Shown here: positions 201 through 8,959 of the stretch, piece after piece
How positions within the stretch are numbered: position 1 is the stretch's first letter
Layout: each line of letters opens with the position of its first letter
DNA from: Phallusia mammillata
Taxonomy: Eukaryota
Length of the DNA stretch: 64,000 nucleotides
NCBI GenBank assembly: GCA_965637545.1
Contig: OZ281496.1
Location: forward strand, 7,688,001-7,752,000
Direction of reading: 5' to 3'
Position numbers and translations under genes: made by a program
Notes under the pieces: generated by a model
Databases searched by the model: none
What the model was told of the DNA's origin: nothing
Seen by the model: only the letters and a program-made list of their open reading frames with translations

Positions 201-1617
201 CAGTATTAGAGATGTGGGCTCTTACTAAATTTTATTGCAGCATTATTGACCCTGCACAATACGAGTGTATTACTGCGACCCAAAACATTAGTGGACACAA
301 TTTATTTTCATGCACACAAAAACATTTGTAGCCATAGTGCTCAAAAAGTAAAGAGTTTTAATCGCGTAAGATTAGCTGCTGGACAACAAAAGAATTAATT
401 TTTTCGTGACTGGCACAAACATTGAGAACACAGTTTTTGTATTATTTTATACTTGGGATGAAACTTGTTTAATTTTGCACAACTTTCATAAATGTTGCAT
501 AGATAGCAAATAGGCAGTGTCGAAATATACAAGCGTAATTGAATTGGGTAGTCAAACTCGATCATCCACTACGCGTTGCGAATGTTAAATAAGGTCCTGC
601 AGTGCTATTAAAAACATTTTTTGGGGCAGGAACTTGGCGGAATGTTCCGGCGGGCTTGACCCATATACAGTCATAAAAACCCTGATGGGCATTCGTAACC
701 TGAGTGTCCTAGGTTCGAACCCCGTGAAAAAAAAAACATTTTCTATGAGTCAGAAACTCGGTGGAATAGTCAAAGAAGCTTGATACAGAAAACCTGATAT
801 TTCCACCCGGGAGCGGCCTAGGTTCAAACCCTGTTAAACATTCAAAAAAAATAAAGAAGTCACCTACAAGATTGACCGTTGCATTAAATCCCATGCTAAG
901 AAGACCACCACTGCTGACGAGCGAAAGAATGAGAATTCTAGCATCAATTTGGAAGTCATGTGCTCCTAGATTCCCAGTAAGTGTTTGTACATTGTCATTT
1001 TCGTCCTTAAACTAGATAATATGTAGAATTTAGATCATTACAATCCAAAATCCTGGGAACGTGTTCATGAAATAGGGGGAGAGGGAGGCAACGTCTAAAT
1101 GCGTTATATTCACATCGAGTCCGCCGTCGAGCTGTCAGTTTTCAATACATTTACAATTTTTCCAATTAATAAGCTAGTGACTTGAATATGTTCACCCATT
1201 GGAAAGTGAAGCCGTTAAATTTTGACTGGTTAACATTTTTTTTCTTGTGCTTGCGAGGTAAACTGCTTTAATTTTATGATATTGATGTAAGTAACAGTTA
1301 ACTCACAAACAGAAGGTCTTCTTCAAGTTCGGTGTCGAAGGAGGAAAATTGAAACACCAAGAACGTCCTTTTTTTCGAGTTTAAATCTCAACACACAGCC
1401 AACGTTAATTACTTTCAAAGTTAGGTGACATTAAATTATACGTCGTGCCAGTAACATTTTCTCCACACGTTTTTGCTGAAATGCGAAAAAGGGGTATGAT
1501 TCAGTTCAACTTTCCTTAGTGGTCAATCTGGCGATCCCCTACTACGAAGCTGACATGTGCAGCATACGAGGCAGGCAACGGTGCTTGTGGTTCGACTTTC
1601 GGCGAATTCTCCACAAA

Positions 1618-1690
1618 GCCTGCGTAGCTCAGTTGGTAGGGCGCGAGTCCCGGAAAGACTCCTGTCGTGGATTCGAATCCCACCGCAGCC
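1618..1690 (+). other. tRNA-like cloverleaf (tRNA-derived SINE head or tRNA pseudogene)
   Basis: A-box TAGCTCAGTTGG and B-box-like GGATTCGAATCC. Acceptor GCCTGCG/CGCAGCC has 1 mismatch, anticodon stem GAGTC/GACTC has loop CCGGAAA (C33 instead of U33), and the T-stem has 1 mismatch. Confidence 0.6.
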
Positions 1691-2475
1691 TAGATTATTT
1701 AGCCTACGCCTTGCCATATGGTGAATGCTTGCTGATCGGCTGATTCTGTATGGCACCTTTAATGGACCTGGCGTACTCGAAATAATTGGAAAAGTTTATC
1801 TATCAGGAAGGGGATTAGATTTGCGTTGTGTTGGCAAAAAAATTGCAGCATTTAGAAAATCTACAATCACAAATATTCACCACAGAAAAATTTGCTAAAT
1901 ACCGTTCGGTGTCGCAAAGAGCATACGCGAATATTTTAAATGCTATTTGTTGAACAATGTCATTCTAAGTCAGACACTCGTTTAGTGCAGAACAAAATTA
2001 CACACAAGCGGCGATAAAAAATACAGAGAGTGCGCTACAAAGACCAAACTGTCTCAGTTTTTAAGCAAAAAAATCCTAAACCGAGATAAGTTATGAAAAC
2101 TGTTAAACAATATTGATTTTTATGCCCGAAAGATGGTTGGGATTGCCGAAATGGGGGAAACACTGATGTAGCTTATTTGTAGTGTCATCTGAAGATAATT
2201 TTGAAAAGTTTATTAATGTATATGAAGAAAACTGTGCTAAAGACCGGGAACTAATGAAAGAGATGATGCTTGGAATTCAAGCACAGTTTCAAAAGAGTGT
2301 TAATGAACTTAAAAAATGATAAAATGCAATAAAGTTGTTGGTGATTGCAACGATTATGATATCTCTGTTTAAGTTTTGGTATCGAGATTACGTGAGGTTG
2401 TCGCCCGTTTGTCTCGTGGTGTGGCTATATTGCTGTGTGTGTTTTGTATCTGTAATTATCGTGTTTAATCGTTGG

Positions 2476-2491
2476 ATTCTATTTGAATAAG
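2476..2491 (+). other. Exact copy of the Ciona-type 16-nt spliced leader ATTCTATTTGAATAAG
   Basis: 16/16 match to the known Ciona SL exon. It is followed by ATCG rather than a GT donor, so it is not an SL RNA gene. Confidence 0.75.
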
Positions 2492-2560
2492 ATCGTACAG
2501 GCAAACTAAGGTAATAATAAAACTGATTTGGTGACCTACAAAAAGTGTGGAACGTTACAA

Positions 2561-2575
2561 TGGTGGCAGCGGTGG
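2561..2575 (+). promoter_or_regulatory. Primer-binding site complementary to the tRNA-Leu 3' end
   Basis: TGGTGGCAGCGGTGG is complementary to ...CCACCGCTGCCACCA and lies 1 nt after a CA LTR end. Confidence 0.65.
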
Positions 2576-3564
2576 CCATTTCAGAAGATTACCTTGATTT
2601 ACCAAAGAAACGAAAACAAAATGGATTTAGCTCGAGGAAAACCATTTGCATCTACTTCAATTTCGGATAAAACTCCCCTTGATACCCCAGAACGTCGTGA
2701 TGAGAAGGTAAAAGAGGCAAAAGCTTGGTTTAAGAAGTATGTGAATAGTGGAGAACCTGAACCAGCTGAACCATGTGCAGCAAAAATTTCTTCGAAATAG
2801 ATAAATACACCGGTTCAATTTGATTCAATTTGGAAACATGACTTTGCAGCGTGGTTAGTAAGTTTTGAAAATTTTGCTGACCTACTTAAAATCCCTATGC
2901 AACAGCGTTCGCTGTCTTTAACAACTTTTTGTGTGCCCGAAATTGGTTTGGAGAGATAGCTCGTCTAGCCTACGGTGATAGTACTGTGAAAAGTGTAATG
3001 CAAATACGTGACCGTTCTGTATGCAGCGCTTTCTTACGTGGCCTACAGGCCACATACGGCGCAATTGTCCTTTAAACGGAAATGGGTTGGAAGATCGCGA
3101 GAGGAGTCTGGCCCAACCCCAATCAATGTAGTTCTGTTAGCCTCTCTGAGTCAACCTGACGACACAGATTCTGTAGTGTATGTGTTCGGAAGCGTACAAG
3201 AACAAGGGATCACCTTCACAGTGGACACAGGGTCACCTGTATGTTTGATGAGTTATGACGTTCTAGAAAGAGTAAGAGGGTCCCGAGTGATCACCTTGGC
3301 GCACCGACCTCTGTTTTGTACCAAGCGGATGGATCGACTTGCTTCCTGCTGATGGTGTGGCGGAATTACGTGTTAAGATCGGTGGTTTAGATGTGTTGTG
3401 TAACTTCTTCGTTACCATGTGTCTGACTGGTAACACTTGCTTGCTTGGTCATGACTTGTGTAACGTTCTGTACTCCCGAGAGTGTTGCATGCTGGTGGAG
3501 CATTTCTGCCGTTCACGTCTCGTCAAGGTGTGTCCTCCCGCTACCGTGTTTATGCAAGTTGTGA

Positions 3565-4762
3565 TCAAGTAATAGCTGCAGGATGTGAATGTTTTGTCGC
3601 TGCAGATATTGGGAAACATTTATTGAAGATTGTACCAAATAAATTACTGAACAGTTTAAATGCCTTATTTGGTTCATTCTCACAGAGAATGCTTGAGGTG
3701 TCAGCTTGGCCCATTAGATGAGAAAATTTAGCAACGCTTTTTTCTGAAAACTGTCTAAATGAGGTTTGGTTGTCAACTTTATTTTTTACATTAACACTTA
3801 CAAAAACAGGAAGATGATCAGATATACAGTCCAAAATTATGAAGGATTGGGTTTGATTTTTTAGGTCATTAGTCCAAATGTTGTCAAGGCATGTTTCACT
3901 TGTATCTGTGATTCTTGTTGGTTTGTTGACTAATGAAATGAAAGAGTTATCAAATAGAATATTGGTAAAGTTGTCAATTTGATTGTTGCTAATATCCAAG
4001 AGGTTGTAATTAAAATCACCAAGAATGTATGAATGATTCTTTTTGTTATTAATACTCAAAAGGGTATCTTTTAAAACTCTTAGAAATTCATCGCTTGTGT
4101 TTAGGTTCTGCCCTGGTGATCTATAGATAGTTCCACATGTTATGGTTTCAGTGCCCAAATCTATATCCACAAAAATAGATTCAAAAACTTTTTCGTTCAT
4201 TATTGTCAGGTCTTTACATAAAGAGTGTTTTATGCCAGATTTAATAAATAAACCAACACCCCCACCAGTTGCTTTACATCTGCTATTTGAGATAAAAGTG
4301 TAGTTTAGCAGGTTGCAATGTAATCCTGGTTGATTTTATTCCTAACCCATGTTTCATTGACACAAATAATAGTAGGTTTAATATTCATATTATGTATTAA
4401 TCCCTCGAGTTTACAGAAGTTATTTGGGTTAACTAATGACCGCGCGTTAATGCAGAGTGTTGAAAAACTGGAAGAAGCATGACAACTTGACACTGGTAAT
4501 TGGTTTGAATAATCATAGCAGCTAGGATCAGTCAACTCATTATATTAATTTCAGTGGAGAGGTAATCTGGGAGTATATTTGGTTCTTTTGTGCCCTTATG
4601 TTGGTAATTGAACTCCTGGTCCGTGAGTGAATTAAATGGGAAATAAGAGTATAATTCAGTATTTAAAAAATTGGTAGTATGGATGGAATTCGACCTACTA
4701 GTTGTGCCCCCTTTTCGGCTTTTAGGTAGATCTCTGACCGGCATAGGGTAAGCCATGCTCAT
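3565..4762 (-). pseudogene. LINE ORF2 N-terminus (APE endonuclease), frameshifted and truncated
   Basis: The domain is split over ORFs 4532-4762, 4305-4535 and 3565-4200; a frameshift lies near 4330-4350 before the GGGVG motif. Confidence 0.8.
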
Positions 4763-4819
4763 AGGTTGTTGCTATAATGAATTACATATGGTACAGTAGG
4801 ACACAGTGTGCTACATTTA

Positions 4820-5533
4820 TCATGCAAAAATAAGTGTGATGATCCAGTTAAAGCAATTAAGATCTTCTATTGTACGGATCACCTTTTTTTGGCCATGGGC
4901 CATTGCATGGATGATTCCATTGTTTGTCCATGTGTTTCTCATTCCAATCCTCTCTTGTACTTGTCGAAGCAGTTGGAGGCGCTTTCTTGTAAGGGATTCT
5001 GTCAGAACAAGTCCACTTTGAGCCAGGTTTCTTTTCTTAAAGAATAGATCGTTCCGAACAGACCTTCGAACAAATTTTATTATTACAGGAGTGCCTTTCT
5101 TTGCTGGAAGGACATGAGCAATGTCAATGTCCTGTTGTGTTACTGGAACACAGGGCTGTAACTTTACATTTAAAATAGGCAAAAGAAAGTTAACCAGGTC
5201 AGAATGACTTCCCTTGGGCACTTTATTAGCACCATGAAGAATCAGGCAGTTTCTTCGGCCATATTGTTCAAGGTCATCCAAGTCCTGCTCACAGCTTTTC
5301 ATCCTTTCATCGAAGGTACGGATCTCCGTCCCAAGTTTGGAAAGCAGGGCCCTCAACTCACCAGCTTCTTTTATCATTCCTTCAGATGGGAGTCCAGTTG
5401 TGGAAACAGTTTCTGGGATTTTAACAGCATTTACTAGCTCGATTTGTTCTTCCAACTTATCTTGTCTTTGTTTGAACTCTTCAAGTGCTTGATTCAGTTT
5501 TTCCATTTGTGTCACATTGGTTGATCTCCCCAT
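4820..5533 (-). CDS. LINE ORF1 protein (coiled coil plus RRM-like domain), 237 aa
   Basis: DDLEQYGRRNCLILHG, DIDIAHVL, PVIIKFVRR, LTESLT and WTNNGII are typical CR1/L2 ORF1 motifs. Confidence 0.8.
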   Translation of the reverse strand: MGRSTNVTQMEKLNQALEEFKQRQDKLEEQIELVNAVKIPETVSTTGLPSEGMIKEAGELRALLSKLGTEIRTFDERMKSCEQDLDDLEQYGRRNCLILHGANKVPKGSHSDLVNFLLPILNVKLQPCVPVTQQDIDIAHVLPAKKGTPVIIKFVRRSVRNDLFFKKRNLAQSGLVLTESLTRKRLQLLRQVQERIGMRNTWTNNGIIHAMAHGQKKVIRTIEDLNCFNWIITLIFA

Positions 5534-8159
5534 TATTTCAGAATTCAGATGTACAGTTCACAAATTTAATTGAGCAAAATGGCTTTATTAAATAATCCTA
5601 AGCAGTCATTTATCCCCTTATTAAAATAGAATGATTACAATTGCAACGATGAAGATCATAATCATACGTAACATATTCTGTTGTTTTGACGCCATTTCGG
5701 GTGTTCTTTCACTGTATTGATTTGCCATCATATCTTTGTGACCAAAAACGTTGTTGTAATGCCCAGCAAAAGTTGGTCAAAATATACAACTGATACAAAA
5801 TTTGCCGTTCCAGTACAGACAAAATATTTCAACTTGCAAAATATGTCGGAGTTATCCTTGTTACAAATGGACCATACCGGGGTTCATTGAAAAACTTGAT
5901 GTCATTGTTTGTTGTCTTATACTGGAGGTTGATGGGTTTGCAAAAGACATTTAAATATCTACGTACGAAAACCTGAAAACAAAATGTAAGTTTTCCCATC
6001 ACGATCGGCCTAAGTGTTTGTATCCAAAACAAGCAATAATGAGCGATAATATAAATTCATAGCAGACGCTTAGAGGCAACGCGTGATTTGAAATAACAAA
6101 AGCTTGAATTTAGTCAAGGTTTGAAACAAGGTTATAAAATAAAAATTTACTAAATCAATCAATTGAAAACTAAATCCTTGAAGCACAAGCTTAGTCAAAC
6201 TATTTAGCCCTACATGAGTGAAAGGATTTCCAGTACGTATTGATTTGAGTTGAGTGAAAAAATCGTAGTAACAAAATTCCACTAAATAATTCACCTTGCC
6301 CGAGATAGCTGCGCAACGTTGAGACGTTAATTATTGCAGCAGTTGAATCAAAATATATTATCGGACAACGAAAATAGAAACTTTCAACCATAATGTAAAC
6401 ATTGTAATCTTCTTAATACTGAAAATAAGCAAATGGTTTTCTACATTTAATGTGACTAAAATGAATGATTTCAAATTTACTCACTTGCCGCGTAGATGCT
6501 CCTTTATTACCCGACTGACATGTTCATCATGTTGCTTTAACCCCAGTGCATGGTTAAAAGATTTCTGCTTCATGCCCAACATTCTGATATTGTTGTGAAA
6601 AAAATATTCATTTGCATTTTTGCTTTGCTATCACATAAGCATAAGGATTGTATTAAATATTTTTGACTAGCTTTGGGTTCAACGTAAAGTCGAAAAAAAT
6701 GATAACATTATGCACAGATTTGAGTGATCGTGATAGCACGACGCAAATTAATACGCAAACAATGTTCAGACCGAAATATCTGTTTTAAGCTGTACATAGT
6801 GTCTTTACAGGATGTTGTAGAATATATTTTGCAACACGAGTTTTGTTGCTGGATGTGGCGATACGACTAGTTGACAAACAGGCAAAGAGTTACAGTTTAA
6901 CATCAACGTACATATTATAATATTTTGGTATTAGTGTTTTGAGTTTAAAGCAAATTAAAACGTAATTGGAAAACATATGAAAGCAATTGTTCCAGTTAAA
7001 GCGATACCCATATTTCTTAACCAAGTAGGTTATCAAATTATACGGTTTTACCTTCCAGTGATTTTTTTTAAAGAATTTTTTGTTATATTGCAAATAAATT
7101 GGCTTAAATATCACGTTTAAGTATAAATACTGCATAAAATTCTATATTAATCAACACAGACCTTTGGTACAATGGAGTATTTGAAGGATTTACAAAATCT
7201 TACATACAAACTGTCATTTAAATCGTATTTAACGATGAAATATTATTATTGTTTAAATCTCTCTAAGAGATTCCAAATAAATAAAAAGTTTGCAAGTACA
7301 AAAATTGGCAAAAAACATAATAAACTCAGATTAAATTCTTGAATGGTTTGCTTCGAAACCAAAGATAACGCAACTTTACTGGACATAACTTTTGCACTAC
7401 GCACCTATTCAAATATACCGCTACGTAGGACAAAGAGAAACTAAAGTCCTCATGAAGATCCAGCTAACCCTGGAGCAGGAGCTGCAAAATTTGACCTGGC
7501 CGTTTCCCCGTGAATGTGATATTATGCTTATTTTAGGCCATACAGCAAATTAATTGTTGTTGTTTGTTTTCTATATTTTTTGTTTGTTTTGGTGAAATTT
7601 GACAGTCTCATGCTTGGATGTTATTGATTTTAATGAAACATTATTATCCGAGTTTATGTAACTAAACATGGCGAGACCGAACCAAGCGTTTTTTTGTAAT
7701 GTTGCAAAAAAAAACCATTGAAAACAATAGGATGTGTCTCCAAATTAACCCATTTACTGGCGCCTAATTTCTAATTTTAATTATTGTACATTTAAACATT
7801 GATAACTGTACATAGAGTCACCGTTTTTATTTTTACTCTGCGTAATACATGTTTCACACTGTTAGAAAACCAAATCTACACAAAAAGGCAACTTTGACCC
7901 AAAGTAAACCTTTCAATAAACTTCTAGTCGGTAACACTACTTTTCGTTGTGAGTCAACAAGTGAATTTTTAAACTTGAAATGACATTAAATGGAATTTCA
8001 CAAAAAACACATTGATGGATCAGCATGTGTTTTTCAAATTCCAGACCAAGTAAATGTTTTACCAAAAACGTCGCATCGATAAGACTTCTTTTTATTGTGA
8101 ATCAACATGTGGGTTTTCAAACTTCCACTTTGGATAAATCATTTACCACAAGTATAACA

Positions 8160-8846
8160 TCATTGTGGTTTCTCTCTAGTGTGAATCAACATGTGTGTTT
8201 TCAGATTTGAAATGATACTGAAACTCTTTTCACAAACATTACATCGATGAGGTTTCTCTTCGGTGTGGGATAGCATGTGTCTTTTCAAATTTGAAATGAT
8301 ACTGAAAGTCTTTTCACAAACATCACATCGATGAGGTTTCTCTTTGGTGTGAGTCAACATGTGTGTTGTTAAACTTTCCATACGAGCAAACCCTTTTTCA
8401 CAAACATCACAACGATGAGGTTTCTCTTTAGTGTGAGTCAACATGTGTCTTTTCAAAAGTCCACTTCGGGTAAATCGTTTATCACAATTATCACATCGAT
8501 ATGGTCTCTCTTTAGTGTGAATCAACATGTGGGTATTTAAAATTCCACTTTGGGTAAATCTTTTATCACAAACATAACATCGATGAGGTTTCTCTTTAGT
8601 ATGAGTCAACATGTGTGATTTTAAAACTTCCATGCGGGCAAACTCTTTTTCACAAACATGACATCGATATGGTCTTTCTTTAGTGTGAACCAACATGTGT
8701 CTTTTCAAAGTTCCTCTTCGGGCAAAAGTTTTTTCACAAACCTCACATCGATGAAGTTTCTCACTGCTGTGTATCGGTATATGTTGTTTTACATTTCCAC
8801 CTTCAGTAAGCCTTTGATCATAAAAACCAAAATCCTTTGATGTCAT
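8160..8846 (-). CDS. C2H2 zinc-finger protein, 7 fingers, 228 aa
   Basis: Seven CxxC-x12-HxxxH units with TKE(K/R)P(H/Y)RC linkers; decayed finger sequence continues past the stop (~8020-8160). Confidence 0.85.
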   Translation of the reverse strand: MTSKDFGFYDQRLTEGGNVKQHIPIHSSEKLHRCEVCEKTFARRGTLKRHMLVHTKERPYRCHVCEKEFARMEVLKSHMLTHTKEKPHRCYVCDKRFTQSGILNTHMLIHTKERPYRCDNCDKRFTRSGLLKRHMLTHTKEKPHRCDVCEKGFARMESLTTHMLTHTKEKPHRCDVCEKTFSIISNLKRHMLSHTEEKPHRCNVCEKSFSIISNLKTHMLIHTREKPQ

Positions 8847-8959
8847 CTCTTTTTAAATTAGTTTTTCAGGTATTACAAAGATAACAGTTAAATTGATTTA
8901 CAATTAATATCGTATGAGCTGAAATAAGATAGGCATTTTAGTTCGCCTGACAATTGTAA

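What the first reader, a model, noticed from the sequence alone, without database searches (positions are those of the whole stretch)
2336..2575. Spliced-leader sequence built into the LTR of a gypsy retrotransposon
Seen: exact ATTCTATTTGAATAAG at 2476-2491, AATAAA at 2516-2521, an LTR end (GTTACA) at 2559, a tRNA-Leu PBS at 2561, then gag and protease remnants. Established: this 16-mer is the Ciona SL that is trans-spliced onto mRNA 5' ends. Inference: it sits where the R region would begin, so either a trans-spliced element RNA was reverse-transcribed and the leader became fixed in the LTR, or the element mimics the SL to borrow SL-dependent translation or stability without trans-splicing. 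My rough chance estimate for the match in a window of this size and AT content is 1e-4 to 1e-3.
Basis: partly seen in the sequence, partly recalled or inferred. Interest (0 to 1): 0.75.

Follow-up and report, generated by a model that had tools for sequence, protein, structure and literature searches.

The report
Host spliced leader built into LTR
A family of gypsy-type jumping genes in this sea-squirt genome carries, inside every long terminal repeat, an exact copy of the 16-base leader that the host normally adds to messenger RNAs only by trans-splicing. This suggests that a leader-tagged element RNA was once copied back into DNA and that the leader now heads the element's transcript.

Summary
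ATTCTATTTGAATAAG lies at 2476-2491, at nt 131-146 of a 214-bp LTR. The LTR spans 2346-2559, not 2336 onward. AATAAA follows 25 nt after the leader, and a PBS starts one base after the LTR.

The 16-mer is this species' own leader. 2,887 copies are followed by a GTAAGCAT donor and sit in 553/555-bp tandem arrays. About 970 further copies are dispersed.

The leader sits at the same LTR position in 5' LTRs, 3' LTRs and solo LTRs with 5-bp target duplications. It is exact in 16 of 28 copies. In diverged subfamilies it is, with the U5 end, the best-conserved block.

The LTR shares only the 16-nt exon with the leader gene, with neither promoter nor intron part. That points to capture from a spliced RNA.

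- **Shown:** the leader is fixed in the LTR, and the element is Ty3/gypsy.
- **Inferred:** the leader is the first 16 nt of R, and the RNA still begins with it, either by renewed trans-splicing at the leader's own AG or by initiation there.

The available RNA data were contigs only and did not decide this. The scan reported the same thing before in another LTR family of this genome (s1-395747). I found a further LTR-like family myself. Verdict: a new variant of a known kind, of moderate to high interest.

The parts
2346..2559 (+). 5' LTR of a truncated Ty3/gypsy copy (214 bp, TGCAACG...CGTTACA)
   Evidence: 34 genome matches have boundaries at query 11-224. Solo copies carry 5-bp target duplications, and 3' LTRs follow a GGGGGGAG polypurine tract.
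2346..2475 (+). Inferred U3
   Evidence: Assigned by position only: everything upstream of the leader. No 5'-end data are available.
2453..2459 (+). TATA-like TAATTAT, 23 nt before the leader
   Evidence: Read from the sequence. Kept as AATTAT or AATTTT in diverged subfamilies. Function not tested.
2465..2469 (+). Branch-point-like TTAAT (CTAAT in subfamilies), 23-24 nt before the leader's terminal AG
   Evidence: No AG lies between it and 2490-2491. Function is inferred.
2476..2491 (+). Exact copy of the host 16-nt spliced-leader exon, LTR nt 131-146
   Evidence: Identical to the exon of the SL RNA genes, with no similarity on either side. Exact in 16 of 28 family LTRs.
2492..2545 (+). Rest of the inferred R, with the poly(A) signal AATAAA at 2516-2521. 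The end of R is approximate.
   Evidence: Read from the sequence. AATAAA or close variants are kept in subfamilies. The poly(A) site was not mapped.
2561..2575 (+). Primer-binding site TGGTGGCAGCGGTGG
   Evidence: Present after every 5' LTR of the family. Its complement is a 594-copy motif in the genome. The tRNA identity was not verified here.
2621..3077 (+). Gag remnant, starting at ATG 2621 and carrying internal deletions
   Evidence: An intact relative (L063:6317-7327) has Retrotrans_gag and a CCHC knuckle.
3070..3615 (+). Protease-region remnant. The copy ends at 3615 against a LINE on the other strand.
   Evidence: Matches element positions 1681-2245. The aspartyl protease hit is in the corresponding ORF of L062.

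Best explanation
The 16-mer is a DNA copy of the host's spliced-leader exon, fixed at the U3/R boundary of the LTR of a Ty3/gypsy family.

**Origin (inferred, about 0.85).** An ancestral element RNA was SL trans-spliced near its 5' end. Minus-strand strong-stop DNA copied the leader. After the first strand transfer the leader was carried into both LTRs, and all descendants inherited it.

**How it works now (inferred, about 0.45 for this full version).** The genomic RNA begins with the leader, so R is the leader plus about 50 nt that include AATAAA. The leader at the RNA 5' end and its copy in the 3' LTR give the homology needed for strand transfer.

The 5' leader is renewed in each cycle. Transcripts that start upstream, in U3 or in flanking DNA, are trans-spliced at the encoded leader's own terminal AG. 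That AG is the first one downstream of a conserved YTAAT branch-point-like motif. A fresh host leader therefore replaces the encoded one, and this keeps it exact while the rest of the LTR drifts.
For: **Shown**
- The exact leader is at LTR nt 131-146 in 5' LTRs, 3' LTRs and solo LTRs.
- It is the species' own leader: 2,887 SL+GTAAGCAT genes sit in 553/555-bp arrays.
- The LTR matches the gene over the 16-nt exon only.
- Both LTRs of a 5,639-bp copy with a GTGGG target duplication carry it.
- The element order is gag-PR-RT-RH-INT.

**Supporting**
- In five diverged subfamily copies the leader window is 0.90 identical against an LTR mean of 0.76. It ranks 15 of 199 windows, and only overlapping windows and the U5 end rank higher.
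- AATAAA lies 25 nt downstream, and the LTR ends 68 nt after the leader, a normal R-U5 layout.
- One old copy (L071) begins exactly at the leader, lacks U3 and runs on through the PBS into gag.
- A contig from a run guessed to be RNA spans flank, whole LTR and PBS. That is the precursor expected for trans-splicing, if it really is RNA.
- A second, unrelated LTR-like family has a perfect 5'-most leader followed by decayed leader relics, with TTCTAAC plus a pyrimidine tract upstream.
- A LINE family in this same window starts at a leader copy.
- Cer1, a gypsy element of C. elegans, has an SL1 trans-spliced RNA (PMC3315495).
Against: - There is no direct 5'-end or cap evidence. The four runs laid were contigs, none begins at 2476, and they may be DNA.
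- A conserved TATA-like TAATTAT lies 23 nt upstream of the leader, which fits initiation at or inside the leader without any trans-splicing.
- The encoded leader is a mediocre acceptor (GAATAAG).
- The same acceptor in the 3' LTR would cut the genomic RNA unless it is weak or suppressed.
- Conservation of a block around a start site is expected under any promoter model.
- All copies examined are broken, and the LTRs of the full copy differ by 3.3%, so the family may be extinct.
Confidence: 0.45

Rival explanations
1. Encoded leader, with no trans-splicing today. The leader was captured once from a trans-spliced RNA. The LTR promoter now initiates at or within it, so the RNA carries a leader-like 5' end with an ordinary cap. 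It serves either as a mimic that borrows leader-dependent translation or stability, or simply as the start-site region.
For: The conserved TAATTAT lies 23 nt upstream of the leader, and the block TCGTTGG plus the leader is conserved as a core promoter would be. R works with any sequence that is repeated at both ends.
Against: The leader starts G|A, not the usual pyrimidine-purine initiator. In the second family the 5'-most leader stays perfect while the next one decays, which fits renewal from RNA better. No data show that leader sequence without its special cap gives any benefit.
Confidence: 0.3
2. Inert fossil. The leader entered a master copy once by reverse transcription of a trans-spliced RNA. 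It is carried along inside the LTR, in U3 or R, with no role.
For: Among close copies the leader decays about like its flanks, 0.97 against 0.93. The family looks old and broken.
Against: It is one of the two best-conserved LTR blocks across subfamilies that are 70-85% identical.
Confidence: 0.2
3. Not RNA-derived. The match is a chance or convergent match, or a piece of an SL RNA gene captured as DNA.
For: None beyond the AT-rich composition of the leader.
Against: The chance expectation is 2.7e-4 per window. The match covers exactly the exon, with no gene promoter, no GT donor and no intron part. It is fixed across the whole family.
Confidence: 0.03

Closest known systems
Cer1 (Ty3/gypsy) of C. 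elegans, SL1 trans-spliced RNA (PMC3315495)
   Same: It is a gypsy-type element whose RNA receives the host spliced leader at an acceptor near its 5' end.
   Different: In Cer1 only the 2.4-kb spliced RNA is trans-spliced and the 8-kb genomic RNA is not. No leader copy is described in its LTR. Here the leader is part of the LTR DNA.
Relict spliced leaders in retroposed dinoflagellate genes (Slamovits and Keeling 2008; cited from my own knowledge)
   Same: The leader is copied back into DNA through a trans-spliced RNA. Tandem relics are seen with the newest copy 5'-most, as in the second LTR-like family here.
   Different: Those are host gene retrocopies, not the terminal repeat of an LTR retrotransposon. 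The dinoflagellate leader has an internal AG that truncates the relics.
Dispersed leader-containing short elements and SL RNA pseudogenes in Ciona genomes (Yeats et al. 2010, cited in PMC7986045 as pseudogenes 'rife in this organism')
   Same: It is the same 16-nt leader, scattered outside the SL gene arrays. There are about 970 such copies here.
   Different: As far as I could find, those were not tied to LTRs or to the U3/R boundary of a retrotransposon.
Leader found inside Schistosoma mansoni retrotransposons (PMC5832876)
   Same: The authors suggest 'trans-spliced retro-transcribed elements'.
   Different: It is only a passing remark, with assembly error offered as an alternative. There is no position in the element and no family analysis.
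Leader-headed LINEs and Penelope hammerhead retrocopies of this genome (earlier scan notes s1-375379, s1-395754, s1-375378)
   Same: The same host leader is reverse-transcribed with a retroelement RNA. One such LINE lies in this window.
   Different: There the leader is simply the 5' end of a target-primed copy. In an LTR element it must pass the strand transfers and ends up duplicated inside both LTRs.

Membership tests
Ty3/gypsy (Metaviridae) LTR retrotransposon | Direct LTRs ending TG...CA, flanked by a short target-site duplication | tested here: met
   The LTR is 214 bp, TGTAACG...CGTTACA. 5-bp duplications are seen on solo LTRs, and GTGGG flanks the full copy.
Ty3/gypsy (Metaviridae) LTR retrotransposon | PBS next to the 5' LTR and polypurine tract next to the 3' LTR | tested here: met
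   TGGTGGCAGCGGTGG lies one base after the 5' LTRs, and TTTAGGGGGGAGCTC lies before the 3' LTRs. The tRNA-Leu identity was not verified.
Ty3/gypsy (Metaviridae) LTR retrotransposon | Gene order gag, protease, RT, RNase H, integrase | tested here: met
   Pfam hits occur in that order along L062. Gag carries a CCHC knuckle. The best protein relatives are gypsy/17.6-type pol proteins at 37-56% identity.
SL RNA gene or unspliced SL RNA pseudogene | Leader followed by a GT donor and the intron-like part with a stem-loop and U-rich site | tested here: not met
   The genes read SL|GTAAGCATCAGCACATCTTTTTGTGCC. The LTR reads SL|ATCGTACAGG, with no similarity beyond the 16 nt.
SL RNA gene or unspliced SL RNA pseudogene | Gene promoter sequence upstream of the leader | tested here: not met
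   No match between the LTR U3 and the 555-bp gene unit.
Processed (LINE-made) retrocopy of a trans-spliced RNA | Leader at the very 5' end of the insert, poly(A) tail and target duplication around the insert | tested here: not met
   The leader is internal to the LTR, 130 nt from its start, and is present twice per element. Only one old fragment (L071) starts at the leader, and its 3' end is missing.
R region of an LTR (leader as its first 16 nt) | Begins at the RNA 5' end and ends at the poly(A) site | tested here: inconclusive
   The layout fits, with AATAAA 25 nt after the leader and 38 nt before the LTR end. The runs available were contigs with no mapped ends.

The most novel reading that the evidence does not exclude
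This would be an LTR retrotransposon whose terminal redundancy is partly supplied by the host. Its genomic RNA is made by SL trans-splicing onto the encoded leader's own AG. The host leader is therefore renewed at every cycle, serves as the first 16 nt of R for the first strand transfer, and gives the element RNA the host's leader and cap. Several LTR families of this genome would use the same device.
Probability: 0.35. Interest if true: 0.85.

Novelty: new variant of a known kind. Interest (0 to 1): 0.62.

Why it matters
Spliced-leader trans-splicing is seen as a host mRNA-processing step, and LTR retrotransposons are seen as defining their RNA ends with their own promoter and poly(A) signal. 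A host leader fixed at the U3/R boundary says that leader-tagged element RNA went through the full reverse-transcription cycle, strand transfers included. It raises the possibility that these elements depend on, or exploit, trans-splicing for their 5' end, cap and translation.

The encoded leader also gives a simple sequence tag for finding the RNA start of LTR families. It offers a directly testable case (cap type, marked-leader reporter) in a tractable chordate model group. I found no description of this in the papers I could search. The scan noted one other LTR family of this genome with the same feature.

Tried and rejected
- **Sm-site search for SL genes.** A search for SL RNA genes with a Ciona-type Sm site (SL+GT...TTTGG) gave only 6 scattered hits. 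The genes were found instead as SL+GTAAGCAT arrays.
- **264-bp spacing.** Two leader copies 264 bp apart on C1 looked like the C. intestinalis gene repeat but lie in unrelated contexts.
- **First count of dispersed copies.** My first impression that most of the 3,860 copies are dispersed was wrong. 2,887 are genes.
- **RNA evidence.** Four runs guessed to be RNA were laid on 2000-3700 and gave six contigs, none starting at the leader. One spans flank, LTR and PBS, and two match gag remnants at 100%. This neither shows nor excludes a start at 2476.
- **Cross-species test.** Gag found no relatives. PR-RT found only relatives at 37-56% identity. No related LTR from another species could be fetched.
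- **Second family.** Pfam on ORFs downstream of the second leader-bearing repeat gave nothing, so its class is unknown.
- **Rejected readings.** Chance match and DNA capture of an SL gene piece were both rejected.

Full report
**What is there**

The window holds the exact 16-mer ATTCTATTTGAATAAG at 2476-2491 (+). This is the published Ciona spliced leader (PMC1488885, Table 1; PMC7986045). From base composition it is expected 2.7e-4 times in the window and about once in the 240-Mb genome.

Genome copies of the surrounding repeat match from 2346 to 2559. The leader occupies LTR nt 131-146. AATAAA is at 2516-2521, 25 nt after the leader. The LTR ends 68 nt after the leader. The PBS TGGTGGCAGCGGTGG starts one base later, at 2561. 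The gag ATG is at 2621.

The window copy (2346-3615) corresponds to positions 1-2245 of a 5,639-bp full-length copy, with three internal deletions. It ends against a LINE on the other strand.

**The element**

The full copy (L062, contig 6) has two 214-bp LTRs and a GTGGG target duplication. It has the PBS after the 5' LTR and TTTAGGGGGGAGCTC before the 3' LTR. Its Pfam hits run protease, RT, RNase H, integrase.

A relative's gag has Retrotrans_gag and a CCHC knuckle. The nearest database proteins are gypsy/17.6-type pol proteins at 37-56% identity. This is a Ty3/gypsy family. All copies I looked at are broken into pieces, and the two LTRs of L062 differ at 7 of 214 positions, so the family is not young.

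**Is the leader part of the family?**

Yes. An alignment of 28 LTR copies shows the leader at the same position in three settings:
- 5' LTRs, followed by the PBS
- 3' LTRs, preceded by the polypurine tract
- solo LTRs with 5-bp target duplications

It is exact in 16 copies, has one change in 6, and is hit by deletions in the rest.

Among close copies it decays about like its flanks, 0.97 against 0.93 identity to the window copy. That is expected after insertion.

Across five copies from diverged subfamilies (70-85% identical) the leader window is 0.90 identical against an LTR mean of 0.76. It ranks 15 of 199 windows. The only better windows overlap it or lie at the U5 end. So the leader, plus about 5 nt upstream, is one of the two best-kept blocks of the LTR through the family's history.

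**Is it the species' own leader?**

Yes. The 16-mer occurs 3,860 times in the genome, against 0 for the reversed control. Of these, 2,887 are followed by GTAAGCAT and stand in tandem arrays of 553 and 555 bp, for example on the window's own contig at 11.1-11.27 Mb. One unit reads leader | GTAAGCATCAGCACATCTTTTTGTGCCATTTTTT, that is a donor, a small hairpin and a U-run. A second class has a different intron-like part.

About 970 copies are therefore dispersed, non-gene copies.

**Origin**

The LTR and the SL gene unit share exactly the 16 exon bases. There is no promoter sequence before them and no GT donor or intron part after them. The only known way to join that exon to another RNA at precisely this boundary is trans-splicing. 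The leader therefore most likely reached the LTR through a trans-spliced element RNA that was reverse-transcribed. I put this at about 0.85. DNA capture of a gene piece, or chance, is close to excluded.

The position fits what LTR replication predicts. Minus-strand strong-stop DNA runs to the RNA 5' end, so whatever heads the RNA ends up directly after U3 in both LTRs. This is established retroviral and LTR-element replication, applied here by inference.

**How it probably works**

The layout is U3 (130 nt), leader, about 25 nt, AATAAA, about 20 nt to a likely poly(A) site, a short U5, then CA. This reads as a normal LTR in which R begins with the leader.

One old, 73%-identical copy (L071) begins at the leader, has no U3, and continues through the PBS into gag. 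An RNA-derived copy would look like this. It is a single decayed case.

Two conserved motifs lie just upstream, and they point in different directions.
- **YTAAT** (TTAAT here, CTAAT in subfamilies) lies 23-24 nt before the leader's final AG, with no AG in between. This is the geometry of a branch point and acceptor.
- **TAATTAT** lies 23 nt before the leader's first base and could be a TATA box that starts transcription at or inside the leader.

I favour renewal by trans-splicing at the encoded leader's own AG, at about 0.45. It explains why the leader stays exact while its surroundings drift.

A second, unrelated family also supports it. That family is an LTR-like repeat of about 0.5 kb that occurs as direct pairs 2.2-2.4 kb apart. 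It has a perfect 5'-most leader followed by one or two decayed leader relics. TTCTAAC plus a pyrimidine tract lie upstream, and again there is no AG before the leader's own.

Initiation at an encoded leader (0.3) and an inert fossil (0.2) remain open.

**RNA data**

Only contigs of runs guessed to be RNA were on offer. Laid on 2000-3700 they gave six pieces:
- two match the gag remnants at 100%
- one spans upstream flank, the whole LTR and the PBS
- the rest come from solo or 3' LTRs
- none starts at 2476

If the spanning contig is RNA, read-through precursors exist. It may equally be DNA. This does not decide the mechanism.

**Context in this genome and in the literature**

The same window holds a LINE on the minus strand, with ORF1 at 4820-5533 and an endonuclease hit in the ORF at 3565-4200. 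Its family copies all begin 2-4 nt before a one-mismatch leader at 5632-5617. In a sample of 30 dispersed leaders, many are followed by CTGATGA...GAAA hammerhead-like cores.

Earlier notes of this scan report related features:
- leader-headed LINEs (s1-375379, s1-395754)
- Penelope hammerhead retrocopies (s1-375378)
- another LTR family with the leader built in (s1-395747)
- a BEL LTR with a leader acceptor (s1-368990)

I did not re-test those loci. The LTR case was thus found before by the scan on other DNA.

In the papers I could search, the nearest items are these:
- Cer1's SL1 trans-spliced subgenomic RNA (PMC3315495)
- a passing remark on leaders inside S. mansoni retrotransposons (PMC5832876)
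- Ciona SL 'pseudogenes' (PMC7986045, citing Yeats 2010)

None describes a leader at the U3/R boundary of an LTR.

**Verdict**

The reading that a trans-spliced element RNA was reverse-transcribed and the leader became fixed in the LTR is well supported. The leader's role as the start of R, and whether it is renewed by trans-splicing or merely encoded, is inferred and untested. It is a new variant of a known kind, an LTR retrotransposon with a host leader in its terminal repeat, and of moderate to high interest.

Noticed in passing
window 3565-5636 (-): This is the 5' part of a LINE, with ORF1 at 4820-5533 and an endonuclease domain hit in the ORF at 3565-4200. Its family copies all start 2-4 nt before a one-mismatch leader, ATTCTATTTTAATAAG, at 5632-5617. 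It is a leader-headed LINE next to the leader-bearing LTR. It lacks its 3' part where it meets the gypsy remnant at about 3615.
   Followed up: partly
L004, L005, L006 (contig 1: 1.15, 1.55, 2.18 Mb): This is an abundant LTR-like repeat of about 0.5 kb that begins TGTAGCG, with direct pairs 2.2-2.4 kb apart. It has a perfect leader followed by one or two decayed leader relics and AATAAA. TTCTAAC plus a pyrimidine tract lie upstream. Its class is unknown because no Pfam hits were found downstream.
   Followed up: partly
L062 (contig 6: 588837-594487): Six of the seven differences between the 5' and 3' LTRs of the full copy lie downstream of the leader, in the inferred R-U5. Only one lies in the 130-nt U3 (binomial P about 0.005). 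This is unexplained and could be gene conversion.
   Followed up: no
L048-L051 (contig 3: 5.89, 6.31, 7.07, 7.15 Mb): Four copies of a diverged subfamily share the same upstream flank. They carry the leader variant ATTCTATTTAAATAAG, a 30-nt deletion that removes AATAAA, and tandemly repeated LTR-end/PBS units. They look like one insertion spread by segmental duplication.
   Followed up: no
L009-L014 (contig 1: 2.63-2.69 Mb): A tandem repeat of about 6 kb. Each unit holds an exact leader followed by a hammerhead-like CTAAAGATGC...GCGAAATAT context.
   Followed up: no
contig 4: 7.37-7.44 Mb and beyond: The 13-mer CCCACCGCTGCCA, complementary to the PBS, occurs about 590 times on one strand in a 486-bp tandem array. 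This is probably a tRNA gene array.
   Followed up: no
window 1617-1692 (+) and 650-830: ARAGORN calls a tRNA-Ser(GGA) at 1617-1692. tRNA-like GGTTCGAACCC pieces at about 700-830 look like SINE or tRNA-derived repeats.
   Followed up: no
window about 8000-8850 (-): A run of 84-bp repeats with the look of a C2H2 zinc-finger array, read by eye only.
   Followed up: no
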